The notes: generated by a model not told the origin, from the sequence alone. A DNA stretch of 62,934 nt, filler included, from Octopus bimaculoides (GCF_001194135.2; 6 parts of 6 records of this genome joined end to end with filler, not necessarily neighbours in it); one strand, 5' to 3'; positions 16,316 through 50,129 are shown, numbered from the whole stretch's first letter. A program made the numbers and translations.

Positions 16316-17869
16316 TATTTACCACTTTTGTGGCAACAAGCAAACAGTTTCCACACCAATATTTTGTAGGATTGTCGATGGAATTCTCTTGATTTTTTTA
16401 AAGGCATTTTCTTTATGCAATTAGAAGTTAAACATGATTAGTTTATTCGGTATTCTGTGTATATGTGTGCGCATTTATTATAAAAAGTTGACCGTAACTT
16501 AGGATTTTCGAAACAGGTGTCTTCTAAATCTGTAATTTTAAATGTAGGAATTAGACGTGTTAGTGCCATTCAAGGATATCAAGGGTAAAAACTGTTAGTT
16601 GGGATAAAAGATTTAGTTACGGTCATATTTTAATCTTCTATCAAAAATGGATAGGGATTAGGGGCTAACGCCAAATACGGGTTAGAGTAGTTACGAATAT
16701 AATGTATACCACCAGGTGCAATAGGGAATGTTTAAAATACATACAATGAATATAATTATATGATTTAATAGTTAAGAAAGGATCTTAAAGTTTGAAAATT
16801 TCAACGGATTAGTATTTGTGCGAAGTGGTTGAAATGAAATCGAGGAGAGAAAAAAAGACAATGTGGATCGGCTTAATAAAATCATCCCAAGATTATTATT
16901 TAAATTCAAAATTACACAGTATTTGTTGCATTGCTGAGTAATGAGATATGATTCATGATTCAAAATTGAACAATATAATTTTCGAAATTGCATGAAATGA
17001 TTAATTTGATTTAAATTTTAATTAGAATTTAAGTTAGTATATATTGTAAGTTAAGTTACTTTTTCGGGTCCATGTGTAAATCTGCCTATGTGAGGGATAT
17101 TATTGATAAAAATTGTTTGTTTTAAAGCTTTCAGAAATCTATGGAAGTATGTAAGGTTATAAAATAATTGACTAAAATTAGTGTATAATGATATAAATAT
17201 AAAAACATATGAGAAGAATGCATTCTCACTACAGAGAAAAACCAAAAGCTAAAAAAGGCAGCGAAAAAAGACAAATTTTGAGCTTTGATTATTTATGTAA
17301 GAAACAATTCTTCGGAATGATTATTGAAAGCAATATAGTGAATAAACACATAGTATATATACCATGAAAGAGGAATTTCAAAATTCATTGAAAGATACGA
17401 CTAGATATTGTAAGATATGAGGAGAGGTTTAGTTAAGTCAGTATTAATTAAACTGTTGTCAAGGAATTCGAGATGAGTAACATAAATAGCACAAAATCTT
17501 GTTCAAAAAGAATTTAAAGGTTAAGAATGATTGAGAATATTAGTATTTATTCGGTACGAGTCAAGTTATAAATAAGATTAAGAGTTGTAAGAGAGTTTAA
17601 AGTGGTTCTAATAAGGAATTATGCAACGGAGAAGCAAGAGTGAAGTAGTGATCCGACATAATAAAACCATCACTGAGCGGTACTAAACAAATGCACTTGT
17701 TAAAATGTGTAAGTAGGTACATCTTGGCAAATTATTATATAAATGGAAAGAAAATAGGTCATAGCAACAGATAACTATTAATTCAAAACTATACAATGAC
17801 TATAAGGAAACTTGTGATATGTTTGGGAATTGATAACTGTAAGGTATTATACGAAAGCTCGTCTTTCAT

Positions 17870-18078
17870 GTATCCTGCCACAAGTCCCTGTCCAAGACCA
17901 TTCTTCTGGGCACAGCTGAAGAAGACGAAGGAGATGCTAACAGAGAAATTCCTGGTTTAACAACATCAAGGACTGGACAAGCCACAACACAGTGAATTTG
18001 CTATGCATGAAAAGAGATCACCTAGAATGGCACCCAAGTGACCGCCTGCATCAGTTAAGTGATCTAATGATGATGATG
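17870..18078 (+). mobile_element. Degenerate RTE LINE 3' end with (GAT)n tail
   Basis: SLSKTILLGT....SWFNNIKDWT resembles the RTE C-terminal KTILQGTVEG..W.DNIKEWT; ends tgatgatgatga. Confidence 0.55.
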
Positions 18079-19685
18079 AAGGCATTATATACGGAAAAAG
18101 AGTTGAGAGTACATTACAGAAGAAAAGTGATGTGTTAGAGCATACAATGTTAGATATGAATAGCAGATCGAGAAAGAGAAAATCATACTGGAAAAGAGTT
18201 TAAGAAACTATTGTATAGAAATAAAATCATCTCGGGAAATGATTTAGAAAAGAAATAGCCATAGAATGTGCGTTGTGTACAGTTATGCAGAAAAACCAGA
18301 TGTAGTAAGTTGTGGATAATGTAAATAATAAGGATTCTTTTTATAAAATGATTTCTTTTATTTAATAAGAGTTTAAAACTATTATTTAGAATTAAATAAA
18401 TGAATAAATAAATGTTATAAGGCATTGAAATTAGTAATGAACGGGAATAAGTTAGCTTTAAACAGCAAAAAAATAATGCTTAATCGAGCACAAGTTTAAA
18501 AATCAATAAATAGGATTGTAAAGAATCATAGAAAGGGATATGAATTCAGATCTACACACAACGATGTTATCAGTAACCATATATATTAATTATATAAACA
18601 TACAAATTCATATATGAACACACACATACACACACGCATGTATTTATATACAGAGAGAAAGAGAGAGAGAGTGAAAGAAATAGAGAGAGTGAAAGAAATA
18701 GAGAGTGAAAGACATGCATGCACGTACACAGATACAAGTAAATTGCGACATTTAGGTGTATAAAATGGTATATACATACTTACAATATATGTGTATTTAC
18801 ATACGAACATTACTTTGAAATGCAAAGTACGGTAATGGGGACGAAAGGTGCACCGTTTCCAACACTAATAATAGGAGTCCTTGAAGGAAAAAAATTGTAT
18901 TTACCCGAATTATTTTTTATCCGCATTTCCAATCCTTTTAAATTATAAACTGCAAAAAGTTTCCTTGATGACTACTTCATATTTTGAAACGGAAGGAAGA
19001 CCTTGCAAGATTCCCTGAGTCAATAAATAGAATTCATGAATTGATCAAGTATAGCATAGAAATGAAAGAGAACTTACTTTTTTTCTGTAAATCAGATAAT
19101 TAAATTAAATGCGACAGTTACAACCGATGTCTACACGAAAGCACACCAATATTTTGACTCTAGACCTTTCCACCAATTCTATATTAAAATGAATATCCTA
19201 TTCAGTCAGGCAAGACGTATCTACTCAATTGTTACGGACACCAATGGACGAGAGAAACGACAGATAGAACTAAATAAATTCCTTCAGAATCAAAAGTACG
19301 AAAATAAATTAGTAAGTCATCTTATAACTAACACATAAGAGACCCCGATCACAATGTTGGCGCAGACAAAAAAAAAGCATATATTTTTCATTTCTAGTCA
19401 CCCATAATCCAATTATTTTTGCAACAACCCCAAATGGATTTTTTTAAAAAACTGTAAGCACATACACCTTTAACGTGAGTATAGGACAAAGAAGTGTGCA
19501 AGGCTGGTGACCGGCTTTTATTTGGAATATGATATAGTTTTACTCAAAATTTCCAACACATAAACCACAGCTTGCTTCCATAAGAACCACAAATTCAAGA
19601 ACATATAAGTCTCTATTACTAATGTTAACATTTAAAGTAATAAACATTCTCAATGCCGCTTTACAAAAAGACATGTGTATGTGGA

Positions 19686-31375: not shown

Positions 31376-31614
31376 NCGGGTGGCACATAAAAGACACCAT
31401 TTCGAGCGTGGCCGTTTTCGTGCGGGTGACACGTAAAAGCACCCACTACACTCTCTGAGTGGTTGGCGTTAGGAAGGGCATCCAGCTGTAGAAACTCTGC
31501 CAAATCAGACTGGAGCCTGGTGTTGCCATCCGGTTTCACCAGTCCTCAGTCAAATCGTCCAACCCATGCTAGCATGGAAAGCGGACGTTAAACGATGATG
31601 ATGATGATGATGAT
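31376..31614 (+). mobile_element. Young (GAT)n-tailed element, truncated by gap
   Basis: About 4 differences from 122-345 and 2 from the 43680-43905 copy. Confidence 0.85.
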
Positions 31615-36080: not shown

Positions 36081-37186
36081 GCTTCAGTTATACACTCATT
36101 ATCTGACATACAGCATCAGTTATACACTCATTATCTGACATACAGCATCAGTTATACACTCATTATCTGACATACAGCTTCAGTTAAACACTCATTATCT
36201 GACATACAGCTTCAGTGATACACTCATTATCTGACATACAGCATCAGTGATACACTCATTATCTGACATACAGCTTCAGTTATACACTCATTATCTGACA
36301 TACAGCTTCAGTTATACACTCATTATCTGACATACAGCATCAGTTATACACTCATTATCTGACATACAGCATCAGTTATACACTCATTATCTGACATACA
36401 GCATCAGTTATACACTCATTATCTGACATACCNNNNNNNNNNNNNNNNNNNNNNNNNNNNNNNNNNNNNNNNNNNNNNNNNNNNNNNNNNNNNNNNNNNN
36501 NNNNNNNNNNNNNNNNNNNNNNNNNNNNNNNNNNNNNNNNNNNNNNNNNNNNNNNNNNNNNNNNNNNNNNNNNNNNNNNNNNNNNNNNNNNNNNNNNNNN
36601 NNNNNNNNNNNNNNNNNNNNNNNNNNNNNNNNNNNNNNNNNNNNNNNNNNNNNNNNNNNNNNNNNNNNNNNNNNNNNNNNNNNNNNNNNNNNNNNNNNNN
36701 NNNNNNNNNNNNNNNNNNNNNNNNNNNNNNNNNNNNNNNNNNNNNNNNNNNNNNNNNNNNNNNNNNNNNNNNNNNNNNNNNNNNNNNNNNNNNNNNNNNN
36801 NNNNNNNNNNNNNNNNNNNNNNNNNNNNNNNNNNNNNNNNNNNNNNNNNNNNNNNNNNNNNNNNNNNNNNNNNNNNNNNNNNNNNNNNNNNNNNNNNNNN
36901 NNNNNNNNNNNNNNNNNNNNNNNNNNNNNNNNNNNNNNNNNNNNNNNNNNNNNNNNNNNNNNNNNNNNNNNNNNNNNNNNNNNNNNNNNNNNNNNNNNNN
37001 NNNNNNNNNNNNNNNNNNNNNNNNNNNNNNNNNNNNNNNNNNNNNNNNNNNNNNNNNNCGCTTCAGTTATACACTCATTATCTGACATACAGCATCAGTT
37101 ATACACTCATTATCTGACATACAGCATCAGTTATACACTCATTATCTGACATACAGCATCAGTTATACACTCATTATCTGACATAC
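36081..37186. repeat. 32-bp minisatellite cagttatacactcattatctgacatacagc(a/t)t in the last intron, interrupted by a gap
   Basis: About 11 units before and about 4 after the N-run; period 32 (36085 to 36117). Confidence 0.95.
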
Positions 37187-37713: not shown

Positions 37714-37934
37714 CTATAGCATGAAGAAAAAGAAAATATAAAAATACATGCAAAACAACTTTGAATCACATGGCTTTGCAATGTCCAGGGATATAATAGA
37801 AGATGATTGCCCAAGGTACCGTGCAATGGGATTAAACTCTAAGCAACATGGTTGAGAATCTAATTTAACCACATAGCCATGCCAGTGTTAAGCTCAGAAA
37901 GCCAGTTCAGCCATCTTAATAAAATAATCCTTAC

Positions 37935-38088
37935 CATCATAACGATATCCTTCTTCAGGGGCAAAATCACTCTGGGATTTATAACCTCGGATCACTCTAA
38001 CAGGCCTTCCTAGTTCACAGTTGCGGCTCAGAGCTAAGTTTCCTCGAGTCAATGTTTGGTCTTTAGACTGTGGTGCTGTTCTTAAATT
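37935..38088 (-). CDS. SRA/YDG protein exon: NLRTAPQSKDQTLTRGNLALSRNCELGRPVRVIRGYKSQSDFAPEEGYRYD
   Basis: ttttcag|...G|gtaag; PVRVIRG and APxxGYRYDG are SRA hallmarks. Confidence 0.95.
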
Positions 38089-38419
38089 CTGAAAAGGTGA
38101 AAAAAAAAAAAACTGTTTTTAAAAAATCTGAGAAGATTCATAGCAATCTGAGTAAGCAATAGTTAATTCTGTAAGAGTTGATTGTGGAAGACGTTTGCCA
38201 AGGGAACCACACAGTGGGACTGAACCCAAGGCTGCCTGGTTAGGAAGCAAGTTTCTTAACCACACAGCTACACTTCAGTTGTAGTACACTAACCAACAGT
38301 AAAAATAAAATAACTACTGAATTTAGTTAGCGATAAGGCCAAAACTTTCTCTTTATTCATACATTTTTGGGGTTGTGTCAATGTAAGAAATTCTTATTGT
38401 TTCTTCACACACCTGCAGA

Positions 38420-38815
38420 ATCATCATCATCATCAGCGTTTAACATCCACTTTCCATGCTGGCATGGGTTGGATGGTTTTACTGGGGACTGGTAGGCCAG
38501 GAGGCTGCATCAGGCTCCAATCTCATCTGGCAAAGTTTCTACAGCTGGATGCCCTTCCTAACACCAACCACTCGGAGAGTGTAATGGGTGCTTTTACGTG
38601 CCACGGGCACGAGGGCCAGTCAGGCGGTACTGGCACCGACCACACTTAAAAGGTGTTTTTTATGTGCCACCTGCACAGGAGCCAGCCCGGCAGCACTGGC
38701 ACCGACCTCGCTCAAATGTCTTTTACGTGCCAGTAAGGCAACGCTGGCAATGATCATGCTCGAATGGTGCTTTTTAAGTGCCATCAGCAAGGGAGCCAGT
38801 CAGTGGCCCTGGCAA
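38420..38815 (-). mobile_element. Intronic (GAT)n-tailed element
   Basis: catcatcat..gtttaacatccactttccatgctggcatgggttgga.. plus modular body. Confidence 0.8.
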
Positions 38816-38833
38816 TGAAGAAATACAACTTAC

Positions 38834-38871
38834 CTTTGGATTTGTTTTGGTACCTCTGAGATCTCGACCTC
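38834..38871 (-). CDS. SRA/YDG protein exon: (G)GRDLRGTKTNPK
   Basis: ccag|GA...AAG|gtaag; 38 bp, phases 1 and 0 fit both neighbours; matches SRA YTGxGGRDL. Confidence 0.92.
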
Positions 38872-39718
38872 CTGGTAATACGAAGAAGAAAGGATTCAAT
38901 GATAGCAACACAAATGACTTGGTAAAATGTAGAATGGTAGAGTAAAGCTAAGAACTAATGTCACAATATATTCCAGTGGTTGACTGTTTAGATCGCTAGA
39001 CTAGTGGTTAGTGGTCTAAAACACAAGCGCTATCAGTTTGTAGGCGCAGTTACCCCCCACCCCCAGTGGGTTTAAACAAACTGACACTAGATGGTGTTAG
39101 AGTGTGAGATTCTGGCACAACCCCTTAGGACTATCTCTTTCTGCATTGAGACACGAGACTATGAAGATGTAACCTAGCTGTCTCTCCCACACCACACGCC
39201 AGTAGCAGATAGGAGCTAACACACAAAAGACCATGGCCTCCAAGCATCAAACCATTTTCATTTATCATTCAGCTGGTGTATATATGTGTAGCCACATTAA
39301 AGGTATATAAAGTTACAGCCTTGTTTTATGTATTCTTTATACCAGGTTTCCTGTCAAATGATATTACAGCACTGTGCTTCAGCATAGTTTCTGCAGCTGG
39401 ATGCCTTTCCAAACACCAACTACTTTACAGATTACGCTGGGTGCTTTGTTTTTTTTCATGCTAGCTGCACTGGTGAGTTCACTATGCAAGACTGTGAACC
39501 TCCAATAGAAGTAATGTTATGCTAGATGAGGGTTAAAATGTGAGAGAAGGGGCCAAAACAGAACAGGTTTCTTGCTGTAGAGGAGTCACATGGCTAAACA
39601 TATTTTAGAAAAGAAGGTGCGAGTTATCAGGGTGAAGCTGGAAAGAGAGATAAAAGCGTGGTGATGAGGTGTATGGATGGACATTAACTGAATTAGAAAA
39701 GAAGAATGAAAGACCTAC

Positions 39719-39834
39719 CTGCTCCTGTGTATGTGAAGCATTCTCCGAAATCTAAATCATCTTCATAGCCACCTGACAGAGCAATAGAATATGCTCCTTC
39801 TGTTTCACTTCCATGAATACCAGCAACTGTAGGT
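39719..39834 (-). CDS. SRA/YDG protein exon: (R)[38 protein letters not shown]
   Basis: ttcag|A...G|gtagg; AGIHG, [13 protein letters not shown] and FTYTG are SRA methylcytosine-pocket motifs. Confidence 0.95.
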
Positions 39835-40610
39835 CTGAACAAGATGTGCGTGTGTGTATGATTAAGAAAGAAGAAGAGAAACCATCAATAGTAACAGAGT
39901 TGGAAGATGTTGCTGCAAAATAGCAACAAATCCAAACTATTTTTAAACATTTAAAATAGTGTGTGAATGGACAGCATAACGCACAGGACTTCATTCTACC
40001 TCTTGTCCAAATACAGTATTCCTCATTTACGATGCATGAATGCATTCAGATTTCTGGGATTTTATTAATTCTTTAAACTAAGTAAAGCATTTAACAACAG
40101 GAAATTTCAAGAGATTAACACTAAACCCAAGTAACCCCAAAGAATTCCATCGTTCATTATGTTCCCTTAAATAGGTAAGACGCTAATTTTAGTAGGATAA
40201 GAACAGATATATACAGCAAAAGAGATCCAAATAATCTAGAGTAACTTGTAAAATTTTCAAAATTGTAATTGTATTTCTATATAAAAATATCATTCAGATT
40301 CTAATCAGACACAATCAATTAGAACTAAGGCCAATTTAAAAAAGTGACTATTTTATCTTTATTCTAATAATGTATCTAGAACTACATTGTCCAATGTGAC
40401 CAGCTGTTTTTAAGAAAAGAGGATATGATTCAAGGAAAATCTGGTTGCTATCTTTAGCATGTTGAGTGACCACATTAAACAAAAACAATTGATTTAACTG
40501 TCCCATTCTTATTCTCTCTAAGTTCACTAAACAAGCATATTTGGCCCAAATATGTGTGAATTAGTAACTGAAATTCTCACTCTTCCAAGTATGACAATCA
40601 AGTAACTTAC

Positions 40611-40671
40611 CTGTGGATTCCAGCATAGCTACACTCCACTCGAGACTGCCACCAGGTACCAACTTCTACAC
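40611..40671 (-). CDS. SRA/YDG protein exon: (G)VEVGTWWQSRVECSYAGIH(R)
   Basis: acag|GT...AG|gtaagt; homologous to the UHRF1 SRA start G.PVG..W..R...S..GVHR. Confidence 0.93.
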
Positions 40672-40904
40672 CTGTCGGATACAAGAAACGTGATAAATTT
40701 TATTGACAAGGTTGGTAATAAATAAAAGCTATTATTTATTAAAGAATACATATTTATGTCACTCTTTGACTGATTTCACTTATTGGACTGCAACCATGCT
40801 GAGAAACAACCATCAAAGGTGTTGGTCACTTACACTGACTCTAGAATTTTACTTCTTGATAATTTTGTAACAAGAAAAAGTAAAATTGACCGAGGCATTA
40901 AGGG

Positions 40905-41337
40905 ATGCATAGGCCACAGGATATGGTCTCACTTGGCTTGCCGGGTCTTCTCGAGCACAGTATATTTCCAAAGGTCTTGGTCACTTGTCATTGCCTCGGT
41001 GAGGCCTAATGTTTGAAGGTCGTGCTTCACCACCTCATCCCAGGTCTTCCTGGGTCTACCTCTTCCACAGGTTCCCTCTACTGCTAGGGTGTGACACTTT
41101 TTCACACAGCTATCCTCATCCATTCGTACCACATGACTATACCAGCACAGTCATCTCCCTTGCACACCACATCTGGTGCTTCTTAGGTCCAACTTTTCTC
41201 TCAAGGTACTTACACTCTGTCGAGTATGCACACTGACATTACACATCCAGCAGAGCATACTGGCTTCGTTCCTTGCAAGCTTATGCATGTCCTCAGCAGT
41301 CATGGCCCATGTTTCACTGCCATGTAGCATGGCTGTT
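40905..41337 (-). mobile_element. RTE LINE 3' fragment
   Basis: AMLHGSETWAMT..LCWYSHVVRMDEDSCVKKC..VEGTCGRGRPRKTWDEVVKHDL. Confidence 0.9.
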
Positions 41338-41973
41338 TGTGAAATTTTGAATTTAGTTCACGGACCCCTAGTACTACCTCTGTGGATGACCAGAGGTCCA
41401 CGGACCCCAGGTTGGGAACCACTGATCTAGGAAGACAATAACTTTGAATAATAAGAATACACAGAAAGTAATGGGGATAGAATAAAATATAATTTGTTCA
41501 TGTCTATGTGTGAAATGAATGGAATACTTCAACACCTACCCAACTTATGCAGACATGGAATTAAAAAAATCATTGTTTTATTGCTCTCTTTTCCATGCTT
41601 GCAACCATCAAATTAAATTCATTGAGGCAGATTTTCTATGACTAGATTCCCTTCCTGTTATGAACTGCCTAAGGAAGGTATATATATCTCCATGCTCAGA
41701 TATGTTTTCAGGGAAGACTGGCAACGAAGGACACTGCTTGTATGATGGTTGGGAAGCAAGTTCCTCAAAATCACAGCAATACTTGCACCTACAAGCCACA
41801 CAGGTGCATGAATAAAGAGACACCTGTCCAAACCGTCATTTGCTGTGGGATTTAACCCAGAATCACTGATTCTGAAATGGAACTTCTTAAACCTACAGAG
41901 ACATCTAAGGAAAGCTATGACAATGACAGAAGCTACACAGAGTATTGTTATTAGCAAGGATAAGAAACCTCAC

Positions 41974-42076
41974 CTTCAATTGAACCAAATGTATTTTCTC
42001 GAAACTGAGGAATTCTTTTAGCTGGAGACGGTTTATCCTCATCAAGGAGTTCAATGAAATTGTTTTCAGATGGTTT
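41974..42076 (-). CDS. SRA/YDG protein exon: KPSENNFIELLDEDKPSPAKRIPQFRENTFGSIE(G)
   Basis: ttttttctag|AAA...G|gtgag; FGSIEG joins into the SRA start motif FGxIxG. Confidence 0.88.
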
Positions 42077-42373
42077 CTAGAAAAAACAAGAAAATTGTTA
42101 AAATTAGGGGCAGGGGGAAATCTGTAAAAAAATGTTACCATTAGCACAGTGAAGTTGCTGAAGACTTGTTATTTAGAGTTGTGTTTCTGACTTTTCGGTT
42201 CCTTAAATGGTTTAATCAGGACAGACTTCTGCATATGACCTTTGCAGAGCCTCCAAGACTGGCAGATAGCAAAATTAATGCACTTCAGTTTAAATGAACA
42301 ATCATCACTTTAACCCCCACCACCTTTTTTAACCATATTTCTGTTGAAATTCAATTAATTTTGAAACTTTTAA

Positions 42374-42651
42374 CCCATTACCTACCAGTGATCTCATACG
42401 AGATCACTTAAAAATTACAAATTTTGTAATTATCTGTCAATATTTACACATATCTAACCTTTTTGCTATATCTACTAGGTATATTTCTCTGATATTCAAA
42501 TGAGGTTTGCTAACTTTTCACCCAATATCTCGCTTATTTCTATTTAAAATGTTATTTTGATCATGTCAGCATGTTTCTAAGGCTGTTTTATGCTAGAAAT
42601 CAAAGTTTCATAAAAAAAATTCCAGTTAATAGAATTAGGGGAGGTAATGGG
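42374..42651. mobile_element. piggyBac-like MITE with TTAA target-site duplication
   Basis: ttaa|cccattacct ... aggtaatggg|ttaa (10-bp perfect TIR, CCC/GGG ends). Confidence 0.7.
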
Positions 42652-42954
42652 TTAAAGAAAGTAGTAAAATAACTATTTTTTAAATTGGGAGCGGGAACAT
42701 AAATCAACATGGAATTTGGATGTACGTTTTAATTTAGATCATATCAACCCTTTAGTTACCATATTTCTGCTAAAATTCACTGCTTTTGTTTCAATTAATT
42801 TCAAAAATAAAGAACTTATTAAAATAACTGCCATTATTAAACTGGTGTTTGGAATATAAATAAACATGAAATTTTTATAAGAGGTTTTAATTAAAATCAC
42901 TTAAACCATGAAGTTGGTATCCTAGAACCATAGGTGATCTCAAAAACCAGATTG

Positions 42955-43215
42955 GCATCATCATCATCATTTAGCGTCCATTGTCCATGCTGGCATGGGT
43001 TGGACAGTCTGACCAGGGCTGGTAAGCTGAGAGGCTGCACCAGACTCCAGTCCGATTTGGCATGGTTTCTACAACTGGATGCCCTTCCTAACACCAACCA
43101 CTCCATTCGTGTGACACCAATATCTGCCACAATTTTACTTGGTCCGAAGAGCCTTCTTCTCAAGCACGGCATAATGCCAAAGGTCTTGGTCATTTGACGT
43201 TGTCTCTGCGCAAAT
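42955..43215 (-). mobile_element. Intronic (GAT)n-tailed element
   Basis: catcatcatcatcatttagcgtcc..ccatgctggcatgggttggac..ctggatgcccttcctaacaccaaccac. Confidence 0.8.
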
Positions 43216-43410
43216 CTTTGAAGGCCTTTTTTTTTTGTTAGTAATTAGGTTTATTGTAAAGTTAAAACCCTTTTTTGTCTTAAAACAAAGACATTGTGAC
43301 TGAAGGATGAACTATAAACGAATTCTTGGAAAGCTGATAGGTTTTACTGACTTAGATAACACAAGACCAACATTTTTTCCCAGAAGAATAAACAAAAATT
43401 ATTTTCTTAC

Positions 43411-43560
43411 CTCTCCTCTCAGTCTACAAGAACGTCTCACGGCACCAACACTGATTGAACCTTCATCTGTGGTAGAGGGCACAGATGATCTTTTGGAAGC
43501 CTTTGGTGTCCACTGTGCTTTGCGTTTAATTGGTTTGTGGACCACTTGAAATTTCTCCAG
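43411..43560 (-). CDS. SRA/YDG protein exon: LEKFQVVHKPIKRKAQWTPKASKRSSVPSTTDEGSISVGAVRRSCRLRGE
   Basis: tttccttttag|CTG...GAG|gtaaga; 150 bp, phase 0-0, open. Confidence 0.8.
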
Positions 43561-43649
43561 CTAAAAGGAAAGGACAGAAATGATGACGATGATTCACAAA
43601 ATTTGTTGAAGTGGCTCCTCATTGAACTGCATTTACAAAGGGGCCTGAA

Positions 43650-43921
43650 CCATATATATTATCATCCCCCTGGACTGGTTTGTGCGGGTGGCACATAAAA
43701 GACACCATTTCGAGCGTGGCCGTTTTCGTGCGGGTGACACGTAAAAGCACCCACTACACTCTCTGAGTGGTTGGCGTTAGGAAGGGCATCCAGCTGTAGA
43801 AACTCTGCCAAATCAGACTGGAGCCTGGTGTTGCCATCCGGTTTCACCAGTCCTCAGTCAGATCGTCCAACCCATGCCAGCATGGAAAGCGGACGTTAAA
43901 CGATGATGATGATGATGATGA
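43650..43921 (+). mobile_element. Young intronic (GAT)n-tailed element
   Basis: Near-identical to 31376-31614. Confidence 0.85.
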
Positions 43922-47944: not shown

Positions 47945-48130
47945 TTATCACCATTTAACATCCATTTTCCATGGAGGCATGGGTTGGATGGTTCGACCGG
48001 ATCTGACGAACGAGAGCACTGTATCAAACTCCAATATCAGTATTGGCATAGTTTCTATGGCTGGATGCCCTTTTCTATGCCAACTGCTTTACAGAGTGCG
48101 TTGTGTGCCTTTTCTTGTGGCATCAGTACA
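47945..48130 (-). mobile_element. Diverged (GAT)n-family element
   Basis: catttaacatccattttccatggaggcatgggttggatg..ggctggatgccc. Confidence 0.65.
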
Positions 48131-48450
48131 AGTGAGATCACGAAATAACTTGCAAGACATACGGGAGTGTAGTATTGAGGGAGGTAGCTTTATGCCAGGT
48201 GTCAAAAGGTTGAAATATGAGAAAGACAGAAACAGGGGGTCATGTTCAAGAGAAGATACACGGCTGCCCCCTGTTGGAAAGGCAGGAGAGAGAATAGAGA
48301 CAGAGGATCAGAAAGGGTGGGGGCTATAATCATTTTGCTGCTGCCTGTCAGATGTTGCTCAAAATTAATACAATTGATTTTTCTTACAGATTTATCAAAT
48401 GGCAGTAACAAGGAGTGAAATGAAATAAGAAGAGAAGGAAGTCCATCAAA

Positions 48451-49164
48451 ATGCCTCAGGTTTTACTTGAAGAAACTCACCGAAACCTAACATATCAAGA
48501 AAACAAACACGATGATTTCCTTCTCATTGAAGTGGAAGCAATTCTTCGACACCCAAACCCAGCAAAAATTACACTGTCCCCACCACTCTTCCCCAAAGGT
48601 GGTGATGTTTACCTTTACAAATCTGGTCCCCATGACCGAAGAGTCAAAGATAAATACTGGTGGGTTAACAGAGGGAACAACTTCCACTCAAAAAGTCAAA
48701 AGCGCCATGCCATTATGAAGACATACTTCAGTCTAAAAGATAGAAATGGCAGCAAGAAAAGTGATTGCCTTAATGGATTCAGGCGCCACATCTACCGCCT
48801 GGCGGATGCAAAAGATGACAGGAGAACATTAATGCTTGTTCACTATCTTGGAGATGAAAAACTACACACAACAATCCCTCATGGTAACAGCAAACACAAA
48901 AAAAGTCAGAATGAGAGTAACAGCCATCAAGTAAAAACAATGCTAAGCAATGACTTGGACACAACAACAATGACCACCTCCTTACAAAATTTGAATGCAG
49001 CTAAAAATGAACTGAGAACCTCTGATGGTGTTGGAAGCCGTGGCAAGATTATAAAGTCGCCAATCAATAACCTGAAGCAACCAAGTTTTACCATTCAAAC
49101 ATTAAAAGACAACAGCAGTTCAGATGATTTGAAAATCTGTTTGGAGAAATTAAAACACAAATCG
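48451..49164 (+). CDS. CG-1 (CAMTA-type)-like DNA-binding domain protein, probable first coding exon (unspliced ORF runs to 49227)
   Basis: 258-codon uninterrupted ORF; ITLSPPLFPKGGDVYLY..KDKYWW..KTYF..FRRHIYRL..LVHYLGDE..PHGNSK parallels CG-1 (P..GS..LY..RKDGY.W..F.RR.YWL..VLVHYL); acceptor ttttcttacag| at 48389, donor TCG|gtaaga at 49164. Confidence 0.8.
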
Positions 49165-50129
49165 GTAAGATTTCTTGTTTCAAATGACCTTTTCGGTTCT
49201 CCAGCAGAACCAAAAAGGTTATTTTAGAGCCTTGCTGAAAATTTGAAGTGCTGTGTTCATTCAAATTTACAATAGATATGCATTTATGCTTATATTCTCC
49301 TCCATCACTGTCTGACCCCCACACATCCCTATTTTCTGATCTACGGGTTTATTGCTATTATCCCCGTTTTTCTTCACCCCCATTCCCTACATTCACTCCT
49401 ACTCCAATCTCTAACCACCTGTTGCTCTCCTCTCAAACTAATGAATTTATCCACCCACCCTACCCAATCTTGTGCATTCCTTCTCTTACACTCACCTTCT
49501 TGTACCTTGAAAGTAGGCACCAACACCCGGTCAGCGCCACCACTGTCCTTTCGGTTTTTTCCACCCACTTTTATACAACATGCAAGGTAGCTATATATCT
49601 CCTCTACAGCAAAGCACCTGTCCTTCTGTCGTGCTAAAACTTGGCATCAAGCCACCTACCCCTGCCTACTGCAGCTCCACTCTGTTAAAGGTTGTTTTCC
49701 TCATTGTCTTCTAAGTTAATTGGCGACCTCACCAGGGTCAGTGTTGCCAAATGGCTGGCATGAAAAAGAGAAACCATACAACTGTCCTCTGGCTTGCTGG
49801 ATGCTGTGAAACCATACAAACCCATCACAGCATGGAAGATGAATGTTGAGTGACAGTGATGATAATTTACATGTAGCTGGTCACCATAGGAACAGAAAGC
49901 AGAAGAAATGTAAACAAATGAAAAACGTTCCACAAAGAACATGCTTAAAAAATGAGAATTGGAAACATTGAGAAAATGGTTATTTCCATAATAGTAAAGC
50001 TAATGGCCAAATGTTGGGTTTTGATTAAGCTTTGAATATTAACCATCTCAGACCTGGGCCCTTGTGTCTAACTTTACCCTCCACCTGGGCTCCTGAACAA
50101 AAAAAAAAAAAAAAGAAAAAAAGGTTGCA

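What the first reader, a model, noticed from the sequence alone, without database searches (positions are those of the whole stretch)
48451..49227. Intact CG-1-like DNA-binding-domain gene, probably a domesticated transposon module
Seen: a 258-codon ORF with no stops in otherwise decayed DNA, flanked by good splice sites. Residues about 30-150 follow the CG-1 pattern plus a PHGNSK motif, followed by an S/T/N-rich linker. No TIG, ankyrin or IQ (CAMTA) exon, transposase catalytic domain or TIR was found nearby. Established: CG-1 is the CAMTA DNA-binding domain. From recall (unverified): similar PxGGxVYL..HYLGDE..PHGN domains occur at the N-terminus of invertebrate transposon proteins. Inference: a host-captured, non-CAMTA transcription factor.
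Basis: partly seen in the sequence, partly recalled or inferred. Interest (0 to 1): 0.78.

Follow-up and report, generated by a model that had tools for sequence, protein, structure and literature searches.

The report
Domesticated transposon DNA-binding gene in cephalopods
This is the first coding exon of a real, conserved cephalopod gene whose CG-1/WRKY-like DNA-binding domain came from a Mutator-like transposon, so it is a fairly ordinary but previously undescribed case of a host capturing a transposon part.

Summary
The ORF is real. It gives a 267-codon stop-free stretch, against a maximum of 180 in 300 shuffles. It is coding exon 1 (48451-49164, 238 codons) of a spliced gene, and its last 20 codons are intron read-through.

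- **Domain.** Residues 27-133 match Pfam CG-1 just above the curated cut-off. A confident AlphaFold model matches NAC and SSR4, the published structural neighbours of CG-1. A profile of the family also hits WRKY domains by sequence.
- **Transposon origin.** The nearest non-cephalopod relatives sit at the N-terminus of MULE (Mutator-like) transposases.
- **Host gene, not a transposon.** The Argonauta hians orthologue (689 aa, "uncharacterized protein LOC115212992") lies in a colinear locus. It has the same acceptor and phase-0 donor, and a second exon with no TIG, ankyrin, IQ or transposase domain. Domain dN/dS is 0.06. The piece contains no TIRs and no transposase remnant.
- **Age.** A more distant pair of relatives shares the same neighbour gene, so the capture is old.
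- **Neighbour.** The exon sits head-to-head with an SAD/SRA-domain gene on the other strand. In both loci that extend far enough, the two genes interleave.

The verdict is a domesticated MULE DNA-binding module. Its role as a transcription regulator is inferred, not shown.

The parts
48380..48389 (+). Polypyrimidine tract and AG acceptor (tttcttacAG) preceding the exon
   Evidence: Sequence. Acceptor and the first exon bases (AG|ATT(T/C)ATC) are conserved with A. hians L002.
48390..48450 (+). 5'UTR part of the exon. It contains a 3-codon mini-uORF ATGAAATAA at 48420-48428.
   Evidence: The uORF string is conserved in A. hians but not in L001. At least one further upstream 5'UTR exon is implied by the acceptor but was not located.
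48451..49164 (+). Coding exon 1 (238 codons, ends in phase 0) of the CG-1-like gene
   Evidence: ORF. tblastn of the A. hians protein P0002 aa 1-230 ends at the donor. dN/dS over the whole exon is 0.16 against A. hians.
48502..48900 (+). CG-1-like / WRKY-GCM1-clan DNA-binding domain (aa 18-150), pI 10.0
   Evidence: Pfam CG-1. AF2 pLDDT is above 90 for most of aa 11-140 (block 81-90 is 78, block 121-130 is 88) and falls to about 72 for aa 141-150. Foldseek hits NAC and SSR4. The family profile hits WRKY PDB chains. dN/dS is 0.062. pI.
48649..48663 (+). D67-K-Y-W-W71, the DxxxW motif (within DKYWWVNRG, aligned with WRKY DGYRWRKYG)
   Evidence: D67 and W71 are at least 90% conserved in the family. 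DxxxW is reported to stabilise the recognition loop in this fold group (PMC9252788). WRKY alignment.
48841..48894 (+). HYLGDE(x7)PHGNSK signature (aa 131-148), typical of the transposase-borne subfamily
   Evidence: Y132 and G134 are 97-99% conserved; H144, G145 and N146 are 89-93% conserved among 76-78 relatives. The motif occurs in MULE transposases P0005, P0006 and P0008. PHGN is replaced by SRGS in A. hians.
48901..49164 (+). S/T/N/Q-rich low-complexity linker (aa 151-238)
   Evidence: 41% S+T+N+Q. Low pLDDT. dN/dS 0.29 against A. hians.
49165..49227 (+). GTAAGA donor (49165-49170) and intron read-through up to the stop codon. These 20 codons are not part of the protein.
   Evidence: The donor CG|GTAAG is conserved in window, L002 and L001. 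The A. hians CDS continues in exon 2 about 7 kb downstream. No exon 2 lies within the 3.3 kb left in the piece.
37930..43560 (-). Neighbouring, divergently oriented SAD/SRA-domain gene. Exons lie at about 43560-43402, 42076-41960, 40672-40610, 39839-39705, 38890-38813 and 38094-37930.
   Evidence: tblastx against A. hians, 55-95% aa identity per exon. Pfam SAD_SRA E=4.6e-40 on the joined exons. The same exons lie upstream of the CG-1-like gene in L001 and L002.

Best explanation
Window 48390-49164 (+) is the first coding exon of a single-locus host gene of coleoid cephalopods. Its orthologue in Argonauta hians is annotated only as 'uncharacterized protein LOC115212992'. The exon encodes a basic, zinc-less DNA-binding domain of the CG-1 / WRKY-GCM1 fold group, with an alpha-beta5 sheet and a DxxxW-stabilised recognition loop. 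The domain descends from the N-terminal DNA-binding domain of a Mutator-like (MULE) transposase. The transposase core and the element ends were lost. The exon is now spliced in phase 0 to a large second exon, which encodes mostly disordered sequence plus one strongly conserved block of about 50 aa. The most likely mode of action is inferred, not shown. The domain would bind a specific DNA motif in the major groove, as CAMTA CG-1, WRKY and NAC domains do. The disordered, S/T/N/Q-rich remainder and the conserved C-terminal block would recruit partners, making the protein a lineage-specific transcription or chromatin regulator. Shown: the ORF, the splice sites, the fold, homology to the MULE-borne domains, conserved synteny, and purifying selection. 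Inferred: the direction of transfer (transposon to host), DNA binding, the target motif, and a regulatory role.
For: - **ORF.** Its length is far beyond chance.
- **CG-1 similarity.** Pfam CG-1 at 23.8 bits against a 23.5 cut-off, covering nearly the whole profile. 73 of 124 homologues also hit CG-1.
- **Fold.** AF2 model with pLDDT 84.8. Foldseek top hits are NAC domains (probability 0.99-1.0) and S. pombe SSR4. These are the same neighbours that Holm 2022 found for CG-1 when placing it in the WRKY/GCM1 clan. D67 and W71 of the DxxxW motif are conserved.
- **WRKY link.** The family profile hits six WRKY PDB sequences, best E=0.007, aligning DqYrWvnkG with DGYRWRKYG.
- **Transposon relatives.** MULE, Transposase_mut and Ulp1 domains occur in homologues. 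52 of 133 homologues share the region that follows the domain in the MULE transposase P0005, 34 of them above 130 bits, while P0002 and P0003 do not.
- **Host-gene status.**
  - Two-exon orthologue in A. hians with the same donor.
  - Colinear conserved blocks across about 11 kb.
  - Domain dN/dS of 0.062 at dS of about 1.2.
  - The four cephalopod sequences are monophyletic in 200 of 200 bootstraps, on short branches among long MULE-linked branches.
  - P0003 comes from 2.3-3.0 kb intronless contigs that look like mRNA.
  - No transposase remnant and no TIRs in the piece.
- **Charge.** Domain pI is 10.0.
Against: - The Pfam CG-1 score is marginal, and the orthologue P0002 scores below the cut-off (21.3 bits).
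- No DNA-binding or expression data exist for the window's own species.
- Copy number in that genome could not be measured.
- Exon 2 is outside the piece, so splicing is inferred from relatives.
- The PHGN motif is 89-93% conserved in the family but is lost in A. hians (SRGS), so its role is unclear.
- The direction of transfer rests on distribution and tree shape. The sister group is unresolved.
- The organisms behind P0001/L001 and P0003/L003 are not identified, so the coleoid-wide age is an inference.
Confidence: 0.8

Rival explanations
1. An ordinary, decaying MULE transposon fragment. The ORF would be the still-open N-terminal part of a transposase gene whose remainder has eroded.
For: The closest non-cephalopod relatives of the domain are MULE transposases. 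Dispersed SINE-like repeats surround the exon.
Against: No homologue matches anywhere else in the piece. There are no TIRs; the inverted repeats found are copies of dispersed repeats. An orthologue sits at a colinear locus in A. hians and in a third genome. Domain dN/dS is 0.062. Splice sites are conserved.
Confidence: 0.03
2. The first exon of a canonical CAMTA gene, with TIG, ankyrin and IQ exons lying beyond the end of the piece.
For: Pfam names the domain CG-1, and the piece ends 3.3 kb after the donor.
Against: Full-length relatives P0002 (689 aa) and P0003 (725 aa) carry no TIG, ANK or IQ domain. The domain carries the HYLGDE..PHGNxK signature of the transposase-borne subfamily.
Confidence: 0.01
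3. The same domesticated gene, but working mainly as a transposon regulator. A protein with the DNA-binding domain and no transposase would occupy the ends of related MULE elements, either repressing them or using their dispersed copies as a binding-site network. It would not have its own host-specific motif.
For: The domain keeps nearly all residues conserved in the transposase-borne family. Proteins that derive from transposases and retain only the DNA-binding domain are known to bind the cognate element ends (established knowledge, for example SETMAR and the P-element KP repressor).
Against: No related MULE copy is seen in the 21-kb piece. Conservation across deeply diverged cephalopods at saturated dS outlasts typical transposon family lifetimes. 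Nothing here tests binding.
Confidence: 0.15
4. The locus matters chiefly as an antisense partner of the SRA-domain gene. Transcription through the SRA gene's first exon and promoter would regulate that gene, with the protein secondary.
For: In L002 and L001 the first coding exon of the SRA gene (MSSDYEKLRLKNLADNRRVLAELGI) lies inside intron 1 of the CG-1-like gene on the other strand. This interleaving is conserved in both loci.
Against: Strong purifying selection on the protein sequence (dN/dS 0.062) shows that the protein itself is under constraint. The interleaving could not be confirmed in the window, because that exon is not within the piece.
Confidence: 0.08

Closest known systems
CG-1 domain of CAMTA transcription activators (Pfam PF03859)
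   Same: Sequence match over almost the whole profile. Same predicted alpha-beta5 fold with a DxxxW motif and the same structural neighbours, NAC and SSR4. Basic, with no zinc site.
   Different: No TIG, ankyrin or IQ domains in the full-length relatives. The score is only at the cut-off. An extra HYLGDE..PHGNxK signature is shared with transposases. The relatives are MULE transposases rather than CAMTAs.
WRKY-GCM1 DNA-binding domains of MULE transposases and the transcription factors derived from them (FAR1/FHY3, MUSTANG, FLYWCH, GCM1; Babu et al. 2006, cited in PMC9252788)
   Same: N-terminal DNA-binding domain of a MULE transposase, recruited as a host protein. The family profile aligns DxYxWxxxG with the WRKYGQK strand and xYxG with TYEG of WRKY.
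   Different: The C-x4-5-C...H-x-H zinc ligands are absent. Only the DNA-binding domain was kept, whereas FAR1/FHY3 and MUSTANG retain the transposase core. It is found in animals (cephalopods). No paper linking CG-1 to MULE was found in the searchable library.
Host-transposase fusion genes formed by exon capture (Cosby et al. 2021, from my own knowledge, not read here)
   Same: A transposase DNA-binding domain spliced to non-transposase sequence, at a fixed syntenic locus under purifying selection.
   Different: Here the transposon-derived domain is the N-terminal first coding exon. The partner exon carries no recognised host domain such as KRAB or SCAN.
NAC (NAM) domain and S. pombe SSR4 N-terminal domain
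   Same: Best structural matches to the model.
   Different: 10-21% identity, TM-scores only 0.3-0.46, and no sequence-level match. This is fold-level kinship only.

Membership tests
CG-1 domain family (PF03859) | Score at or above Pfam's gathering threshold over most of the profile | tested here: met
   23.8 bits against 23.5, profile positions 11-114 of 116. The pass is marginal, since orthologue P0002 scores 21.3, but 73 of 124 homologues match at E<=0.001.
CG-1 domain family (PF03859) | Alpha-beta5 fold of the NAC/SSR4/Gti1-Pac2 subgroup with a DxxxW-stabilised recognition loop | tested here: met
   AF2 pLDDT 84.8 with H25-33 and five strands. Foldseek hits NAC and SSR4. D67 and W71 are conserved. 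Criteria from PMC9252788. This is a predicted structure only.
CG-1 domain family (PF03859) | Sequence-specific binding of CGCG-type motifs | not testable with these tools
   Needs PBM, SELEX or DAP-seq.
CAMTA transcription activators | CG-1 followed by TIG, ankyrin repeats and IQ motifs | tested here: not met
   Full-length relatives P0002 and P0003 have none. Nothing of the kind lies in the piece.
WRKY zinc-finger domain (PF03106) | WRKYGQK strand plus C2H2/C2HC zinc ligands | tested here: not met
   The strand is recognisable (DKYWWVNRG against DGYRWRKYG). The Cys pair and HxH are absent and no Cys is conserved in the family. Pfam WRKY does not hit the window protein.
MULE (Mutator-like) transposon | DDE transposase core (PF10551 / PF00872) in the same ORF or element | tested here: not met
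   No match of any transposase-bearing homologue outside the ORF. P0002 and P0003 lack the region.
MULE (Mutator-like) transposon | Terminal inverted repeats flanking the element | tested here: not met
   The inverted repeats near the ORF are copies of dispersed SINE-like and microsatellite repeats.
MULE (Mutator-like) transposon | Multiple dispersed copies in the genome | not testable with these tools
   The host genome is not available. There is one copy in the piece, one in L001 and one in L002.
Domesticated transposase-derived host gene | Orthologues at a syntenic locus in diverged species | tested here: met
   Colinear blocks with A. hians. The same SRA-gene neighbour is present in L001 and L002.
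Domesticated transposase-derived host gene | Purifying selection on the retained domain | tested here: met
   Domain dN/dS is 0.062 (window against A. hians). pN is about 0.18-0.20 at saturated pS against the distant pair.
Domesticated transposase-derived host gene | Expression as a spliced mRNA | tested here: inconclusive
   P0003 comes from six intronless 2.3-3.0 kb Logan contigs with UTR-like flanks, consistent with mRNA. There are no data for the window's species.

The most novel reading that the evidence does not exclude
The CG-1-like gene and the SAD/SRA-domain gene interleaved with it on the opposite strand form a conserved two-gene unit. One partner would read methylated or hemimethylated CpG (SRA). 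The other would bind a CpG-containing motif through a transposon-derived CG-1/WRKY-like domain. Together they would couple DNA methylation state to sequence-specific regulation in cephalopods. A second point: this zinc-less MULE-borne domain matches both WRKY and CG-1 at the sequence level, which would make animal MULE transposases a candidate source of the CAMTA DNA-binding domain.
Probability: 0.1. Interest if true: 0.75.

Novelty: new member of a known kind. Interest (0 to 1): 0.48.

Why it matters
- **A candidate regulator.** It gives cephalopods a lineage-restricted candidate DNA-binding regulator with a clear evolutionary origin. It is one of few documented animal cases where a MULE DNA-binding domain was kept alone.
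- **A wider family.** CG-1-like domains form a widespread N-terminal DNA-binding module of animal MULE transposases. They occur in a hemichordate, an annelid and a gecko among others, and no paper in the searchable library mentions this link.
- **A sequence-level bridge.** The family profile matches both Pfam CG-1 and solved WRKY domains. Until now CG-1 and WRKY had been linked only by structure comparison.
- **Limits.** Transposase domestication is common and the gene model already exists as an uncharacterised protein. This is useful annotation rather than a surprise.

Tried and rejected
- **Word-indexed protein search.** It returned only P0001 for the whole ORF. It returned nothing for the domain alone or for the conserved C-terminal block. 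The exhaustive representative search was what revealed the family.
- **Exact look-up of the 258-aa ORF.** Not on record. This is expected, because the real product continues in exon 2.
- **PDB sequence search with the single protein.** No hit. Only the family profile reached WRKY.
- **C-terminal conserved block of P0002/P0003** (DYxKxFEEASxLPxMGCDVFVLVSYPGCKPAYWGTxKYVxKFENSE).
  - No Pfam hit even at E<=10 and no PDB hit.
  - No similarity to any of the 132 other homologues.
  - A passing resemblance to the MADS-box beta-hairpin was not supported by any search and is dropped.
- **Full-length AF2 of P0002 with a 6-sequence alignment.** pLDDT was 31.6, which is uninformative.
- **Pfam CAC1F_C hit on the linker.** 20.1 bits against a cut-off of 26.6. 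Rejected as low-complexity noise.
- **Pfam scan of raw six-frame references.** Replaced by tblastn of all 133 homologues against the piece.
- **Non-coding RNA checks.** Rfam and ARAGORN on the piece found nothing.
- **Phylogeny scripts.** The first bootstrap script timed out and the second crashed on saturated distances. The capped-distance version ran.
- **Literature searches** for CG-1 with MULE, MuDR, Mutator-like or transposase terms, and for the accession numbers, found nothing relevant.

Full report
**1. The observation**

The 258-codon ORF at 48451-49227 (+) exists as described. It is the longest ORF in the 21-kb piece; the next is 147 aa. The stop-free stretch is 267 codons. In 300 shuffles of the piece the mean was 124 and the maximum 180, and none reached 258.

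The ORF is preceded by ttttcttacag|A at 48389/48390. At 49164/49165 it runs through TCG|GTAAGA. Residues 27-133 match Pfam CG-1 (PF03859) over profile positions 11-114 of 116, with E=4e-5 and 23.8 bits against a curated cut-off of 23.5. PHGNSK lies at aa 143-148.

**2. It is exon 1 of a spliced gene**

An exhaustive HMMER search found 133 relatives. The best is P0002: 689 aa, 66% identity over aa 1-239. It is GAB1608516.1, "uncharacterized protein LOC115212992 [Argonauta hians]", encoded on assembly GCA_054771915.1. That assembly is Argonauta hians according to PMC13652810.

The P0002 CDS has two exons, at L002 10001-10690 and about 17675-19051, separated by an intron of about 7 kb. The window aligns with exon 1 up to exactly the GTAAGA donor. 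So exon 1 in the window is 48451-49164, which is 238 codons ending in phase 0. The last 20 codons of the ORF are intron.

- The donor CG|GTAAG is conserved in the window, in L002 and in a third locus, L001.
- The acceptor and the first 5'UTR bases are conserved between the window and A. hians.
- Exon 2 is not within the 3.3 kb that remain in the piece.

**3. A host gene, not a transposon copy**

- **Synteny.** blastn of the piece against the A. hians locus gives a colinear series of conserved blocks: 37930-38095, 38826-38903, 39705-39839, 40604-40673, 41959-42101, 43408-43566 and 48447-48936.
- **Selection.** Nei-Gojobori dN/dS for the domain (aa 18-150) is 0.062 at dS of about 1.23. For the linker it is 0.29.
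- **A more distant pair.**
  - P0001 is the exon-1 ORF on a 238-kb ENA contig (L001). P0003 is 725 aa and comes from 2.3-3.0 kb intronless Logan contigs that look like mRNA.
  - Against this pair, synonymous sites are saturated while pN in the domain is only 0.18-0.20.
- **Phylogeny.** In a neighbour-joining tree of the 45 domains nearest to the window's, the four cephalopod sequences are monophyletic in 200 of 200 bootstraps. (window + A. hians) and (P0001 + P0003) each have 200 of 200. They sit on short branches among long transposase-linked branches, and their sister group is unresolved.
- **No transposon remains.** None of the 133 relatives matches the piece anywhere outside the ORF. The inverted repeats around the ORF are copies of dispersed SINE-like and microsatellite repeats, which also occur many times in L002.

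The organisms behind L001 and L003 are not identified. That they are decapodiform cephalopods is my inference, based on shared synteny and relative divergence.

**4. What the domain is**

An AlphaFold2 model of aa 1-175, built with a 79-sequence alignment, has mean pLDDT 84.8. Most of aa 11-140 is above 90. The model has one helix (25-33) and five strands.

Foldseek against the PDB returns NAC domains (1ut4, 3swm, 7xp3, 7xlj; probability 0.99-1.0, E about 1e-3) and S. pombe SSR4 (7k82, 7k7v, 7k7w). TM-scores are modest at 0.3-0.46. Holm (2022; PMC9252788) reported these same neighbours for AlphaFold models of CAMTA CG-1. That paper placed CG-1, NAM, SSR4 and Gti1/Pac2 in a subgroup of the WRKY/GCM1 clan, with a DxxxW motif that stabilises the DNA-recognition loop.

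- The window has D67-K-Y-W-W71, and both D67 and W71 are at least 90% conserved in the family.
- A profile of the family alignment hits six distinct WRKY sequences in the PDB (best 1wj2, E=0.007). The alignment pairs DqYrWvnkG with DGYRWRKYG and hYlG with TYEG.
- The WRKY zinc ligands are absent, and no Cys is conserved.
- The domain is basic, with pI 10.0.

It is therefore a zinc-less CG-1-type member of the WRKY/GCM1 fold group. It keeps every strongly conserved family residue: L32, P45, P48, G51, D67, W71, G75, F110, Y132, G134 and H144-N146.

**5. Where it came from**

- The closest single-domain relatives (38-43% identity) carry MULE and Transposase_mut domains after the CG-1-like domain (P0005, P0006). 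Others add a Ulp1 protease (P0020, P0074).
- Pfam finds MULE in 12 of the 124 shorter relatives.
- An iterated search with the region that follows the domain in P0005 recovers 52 of 133 relatives, 34 of them above 130 bits. It never recovers P0002 or P0003.
- The named relatives include proteins from Ptychodera flava, Capitella teleta and Paroedura picta.
- The HY[LI]GDE(x7)PHGN[ST]K signature is common in this transposase-borne family.

MULE transposases with N-terminal WRKY/GCM1-type domains, and host factors derived from them, are established knowledge (Babu et al. 2006, cited). A CG-1-like version fits that pattern. I found no paper in the searchable library that links CG-1 with MULE.

**6. 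The rest of the protein**

P0002 and P0003 have no TIG, ankyrin, IQ or transposase domain, so this is not CAMTA. Beyond the domain they share only one block, P0002 aa 435-541, at 54% identity. Its core of about 50 aa is nearly identical between the two. The block has no Pfam, PDB or other homologue. A full-length model was uninformative, with pLDDT 31.6.

**7. Mechanism**

Shown: an intact, constrained, basic domain of a DNA-binding fold, at the N-terminus of a largely disordered protein that carries a conserved C-terminal block.

Inferred: the protein binds a specific motif through the recognition loop and strand, and recruits partners through the C-terminal part. That would make it a lineage-specific transcription or chromatin regulator.

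A variant that cannot be excluded is that its targets are the ends of related MULE elements. The PHGN motif is 89-93% conserved in the family but is SRGS in A. hians, so it may serve the transposase context rather than DNA binding. This is unexplained.

**8. Surroundings**

On the minus strand upstream lies an SAD/SRA-domain gene. Its exons are at about 43560-43402, 42076-41960, 40672-40610, 39839-39705, 38890-38813 and 38094-37930. Joined together they score Pfam SAD_SRA E=4.6e-40.

In A. hians the annotated 329-aa SRA gene extends to L002 14327. There its first coding exon (MSSDYEKLRLKNLADNRRVLAELGI) lies inside intron 1 of the CG-1-like gene. The same exon lies 8.6 kb downstream of exon 1 in L001, and SRA exons A-C lie upstream of it. 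The two genes are therefore interleaved head-to-head in two distant genomes. In the window the first SRA exon is not within the piece.

**9. Verdict**

The gene model already exists in public annotation as an uncharacterised protein, and transposase domestication is a known phenomenon. This is a new member of a known kind and is moderately interesting. The more novel points are the animal MULE/CG-1-like domain family, which matches both CG-1 and WRKY at the sequence level, and the conserved interleaving with an SRA gene.

Noticed in passing
window 37930-43560 (-); L002 1-14327 (-); L001 1548-3720 and 19284-19364 (-): An SAD/SRA (YDG) domain gene lies head-to-head with the CG-1-like gene. In A. 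hians and in L001 its first coding exon sits inside intron 1 of the CG-1-like gene, so the two genes interleave on opposite strands. The annotated A. hians product is only 329 aa and has no other domain on record, so it does not have the multi-domain UHRF1 architecture.
   Followed up: partly
window 48420-48428; L002 about 9960: A three-codon mini-uORF (ATGAAATAA) in the 5'UTR part of the exon is conserved between the window and A. hians, but not in L001.
   Followed up: partly
window 36084-36431 and 37063-37186, flanking the N run 36433-37058: A 32-bp tandem repeat (TCAGTTATACACTCATTATCTGACATACAGCA, 97-100% matches) lies on both sides of an assembly gap. This is probably one long array that the assembler could not span.
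   Followed up: no
window 31459-31611, 38419-38571 (-), 42956-43104 (-), 43767-43919, 47953-48084 (-): A SINE-like dispersed repeat of about 150 bp is present in several copies in the piece and in many copies in the A. hians locus. It is not tRNA-like by ARAGORN or Rfam.
   Followed up: partly
window 50207-50297, 50801-50896, 51602-51686, 52416-52455: A second dispersed repeat family, associated with (TA)n and (TG)n microsatellites, lies downstream of the exon. It accounts for the long inverted repeats in that region.
   Followed up: partly
proteins P0053, P0085, P0094, P0109 (3458-4108 aa): These giant proteins have an N-terminal CG-1-like domain. P0053, the only one scanned, has it followed by a Ulp1 protease and about 30 ankyrin repeats. 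CG-1 plus ankyrin recalls CAMTA, and these may be other fusions of the same transposon module. Their organisms are unknown.
   Followed up: no
proteins P0004 (Capitella teleta, 1394 aa), P0007, P0013, P0014: These proteins consist of two to six tandem CG-1-like domains with no transposase. This is another architecture of the family.
   Followed up: no
A. hians P0002 aa 143-148 (L002 about 10427-10444): The PHGNSK motif, 89-93% conserved across the family, reads SRGSIK in the A. hians orthologue, while the rest of the domain is 90% identical to the window.
   Followed up: partly
protein P0011/P0143 (Paroedura picta): A gecko protein named 'tripartite motif-containing protein 54' carries a CG-1-like domain at its N-terminus. 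This may be a gene model that absorbed a transposon fragment.
   Followed up: no
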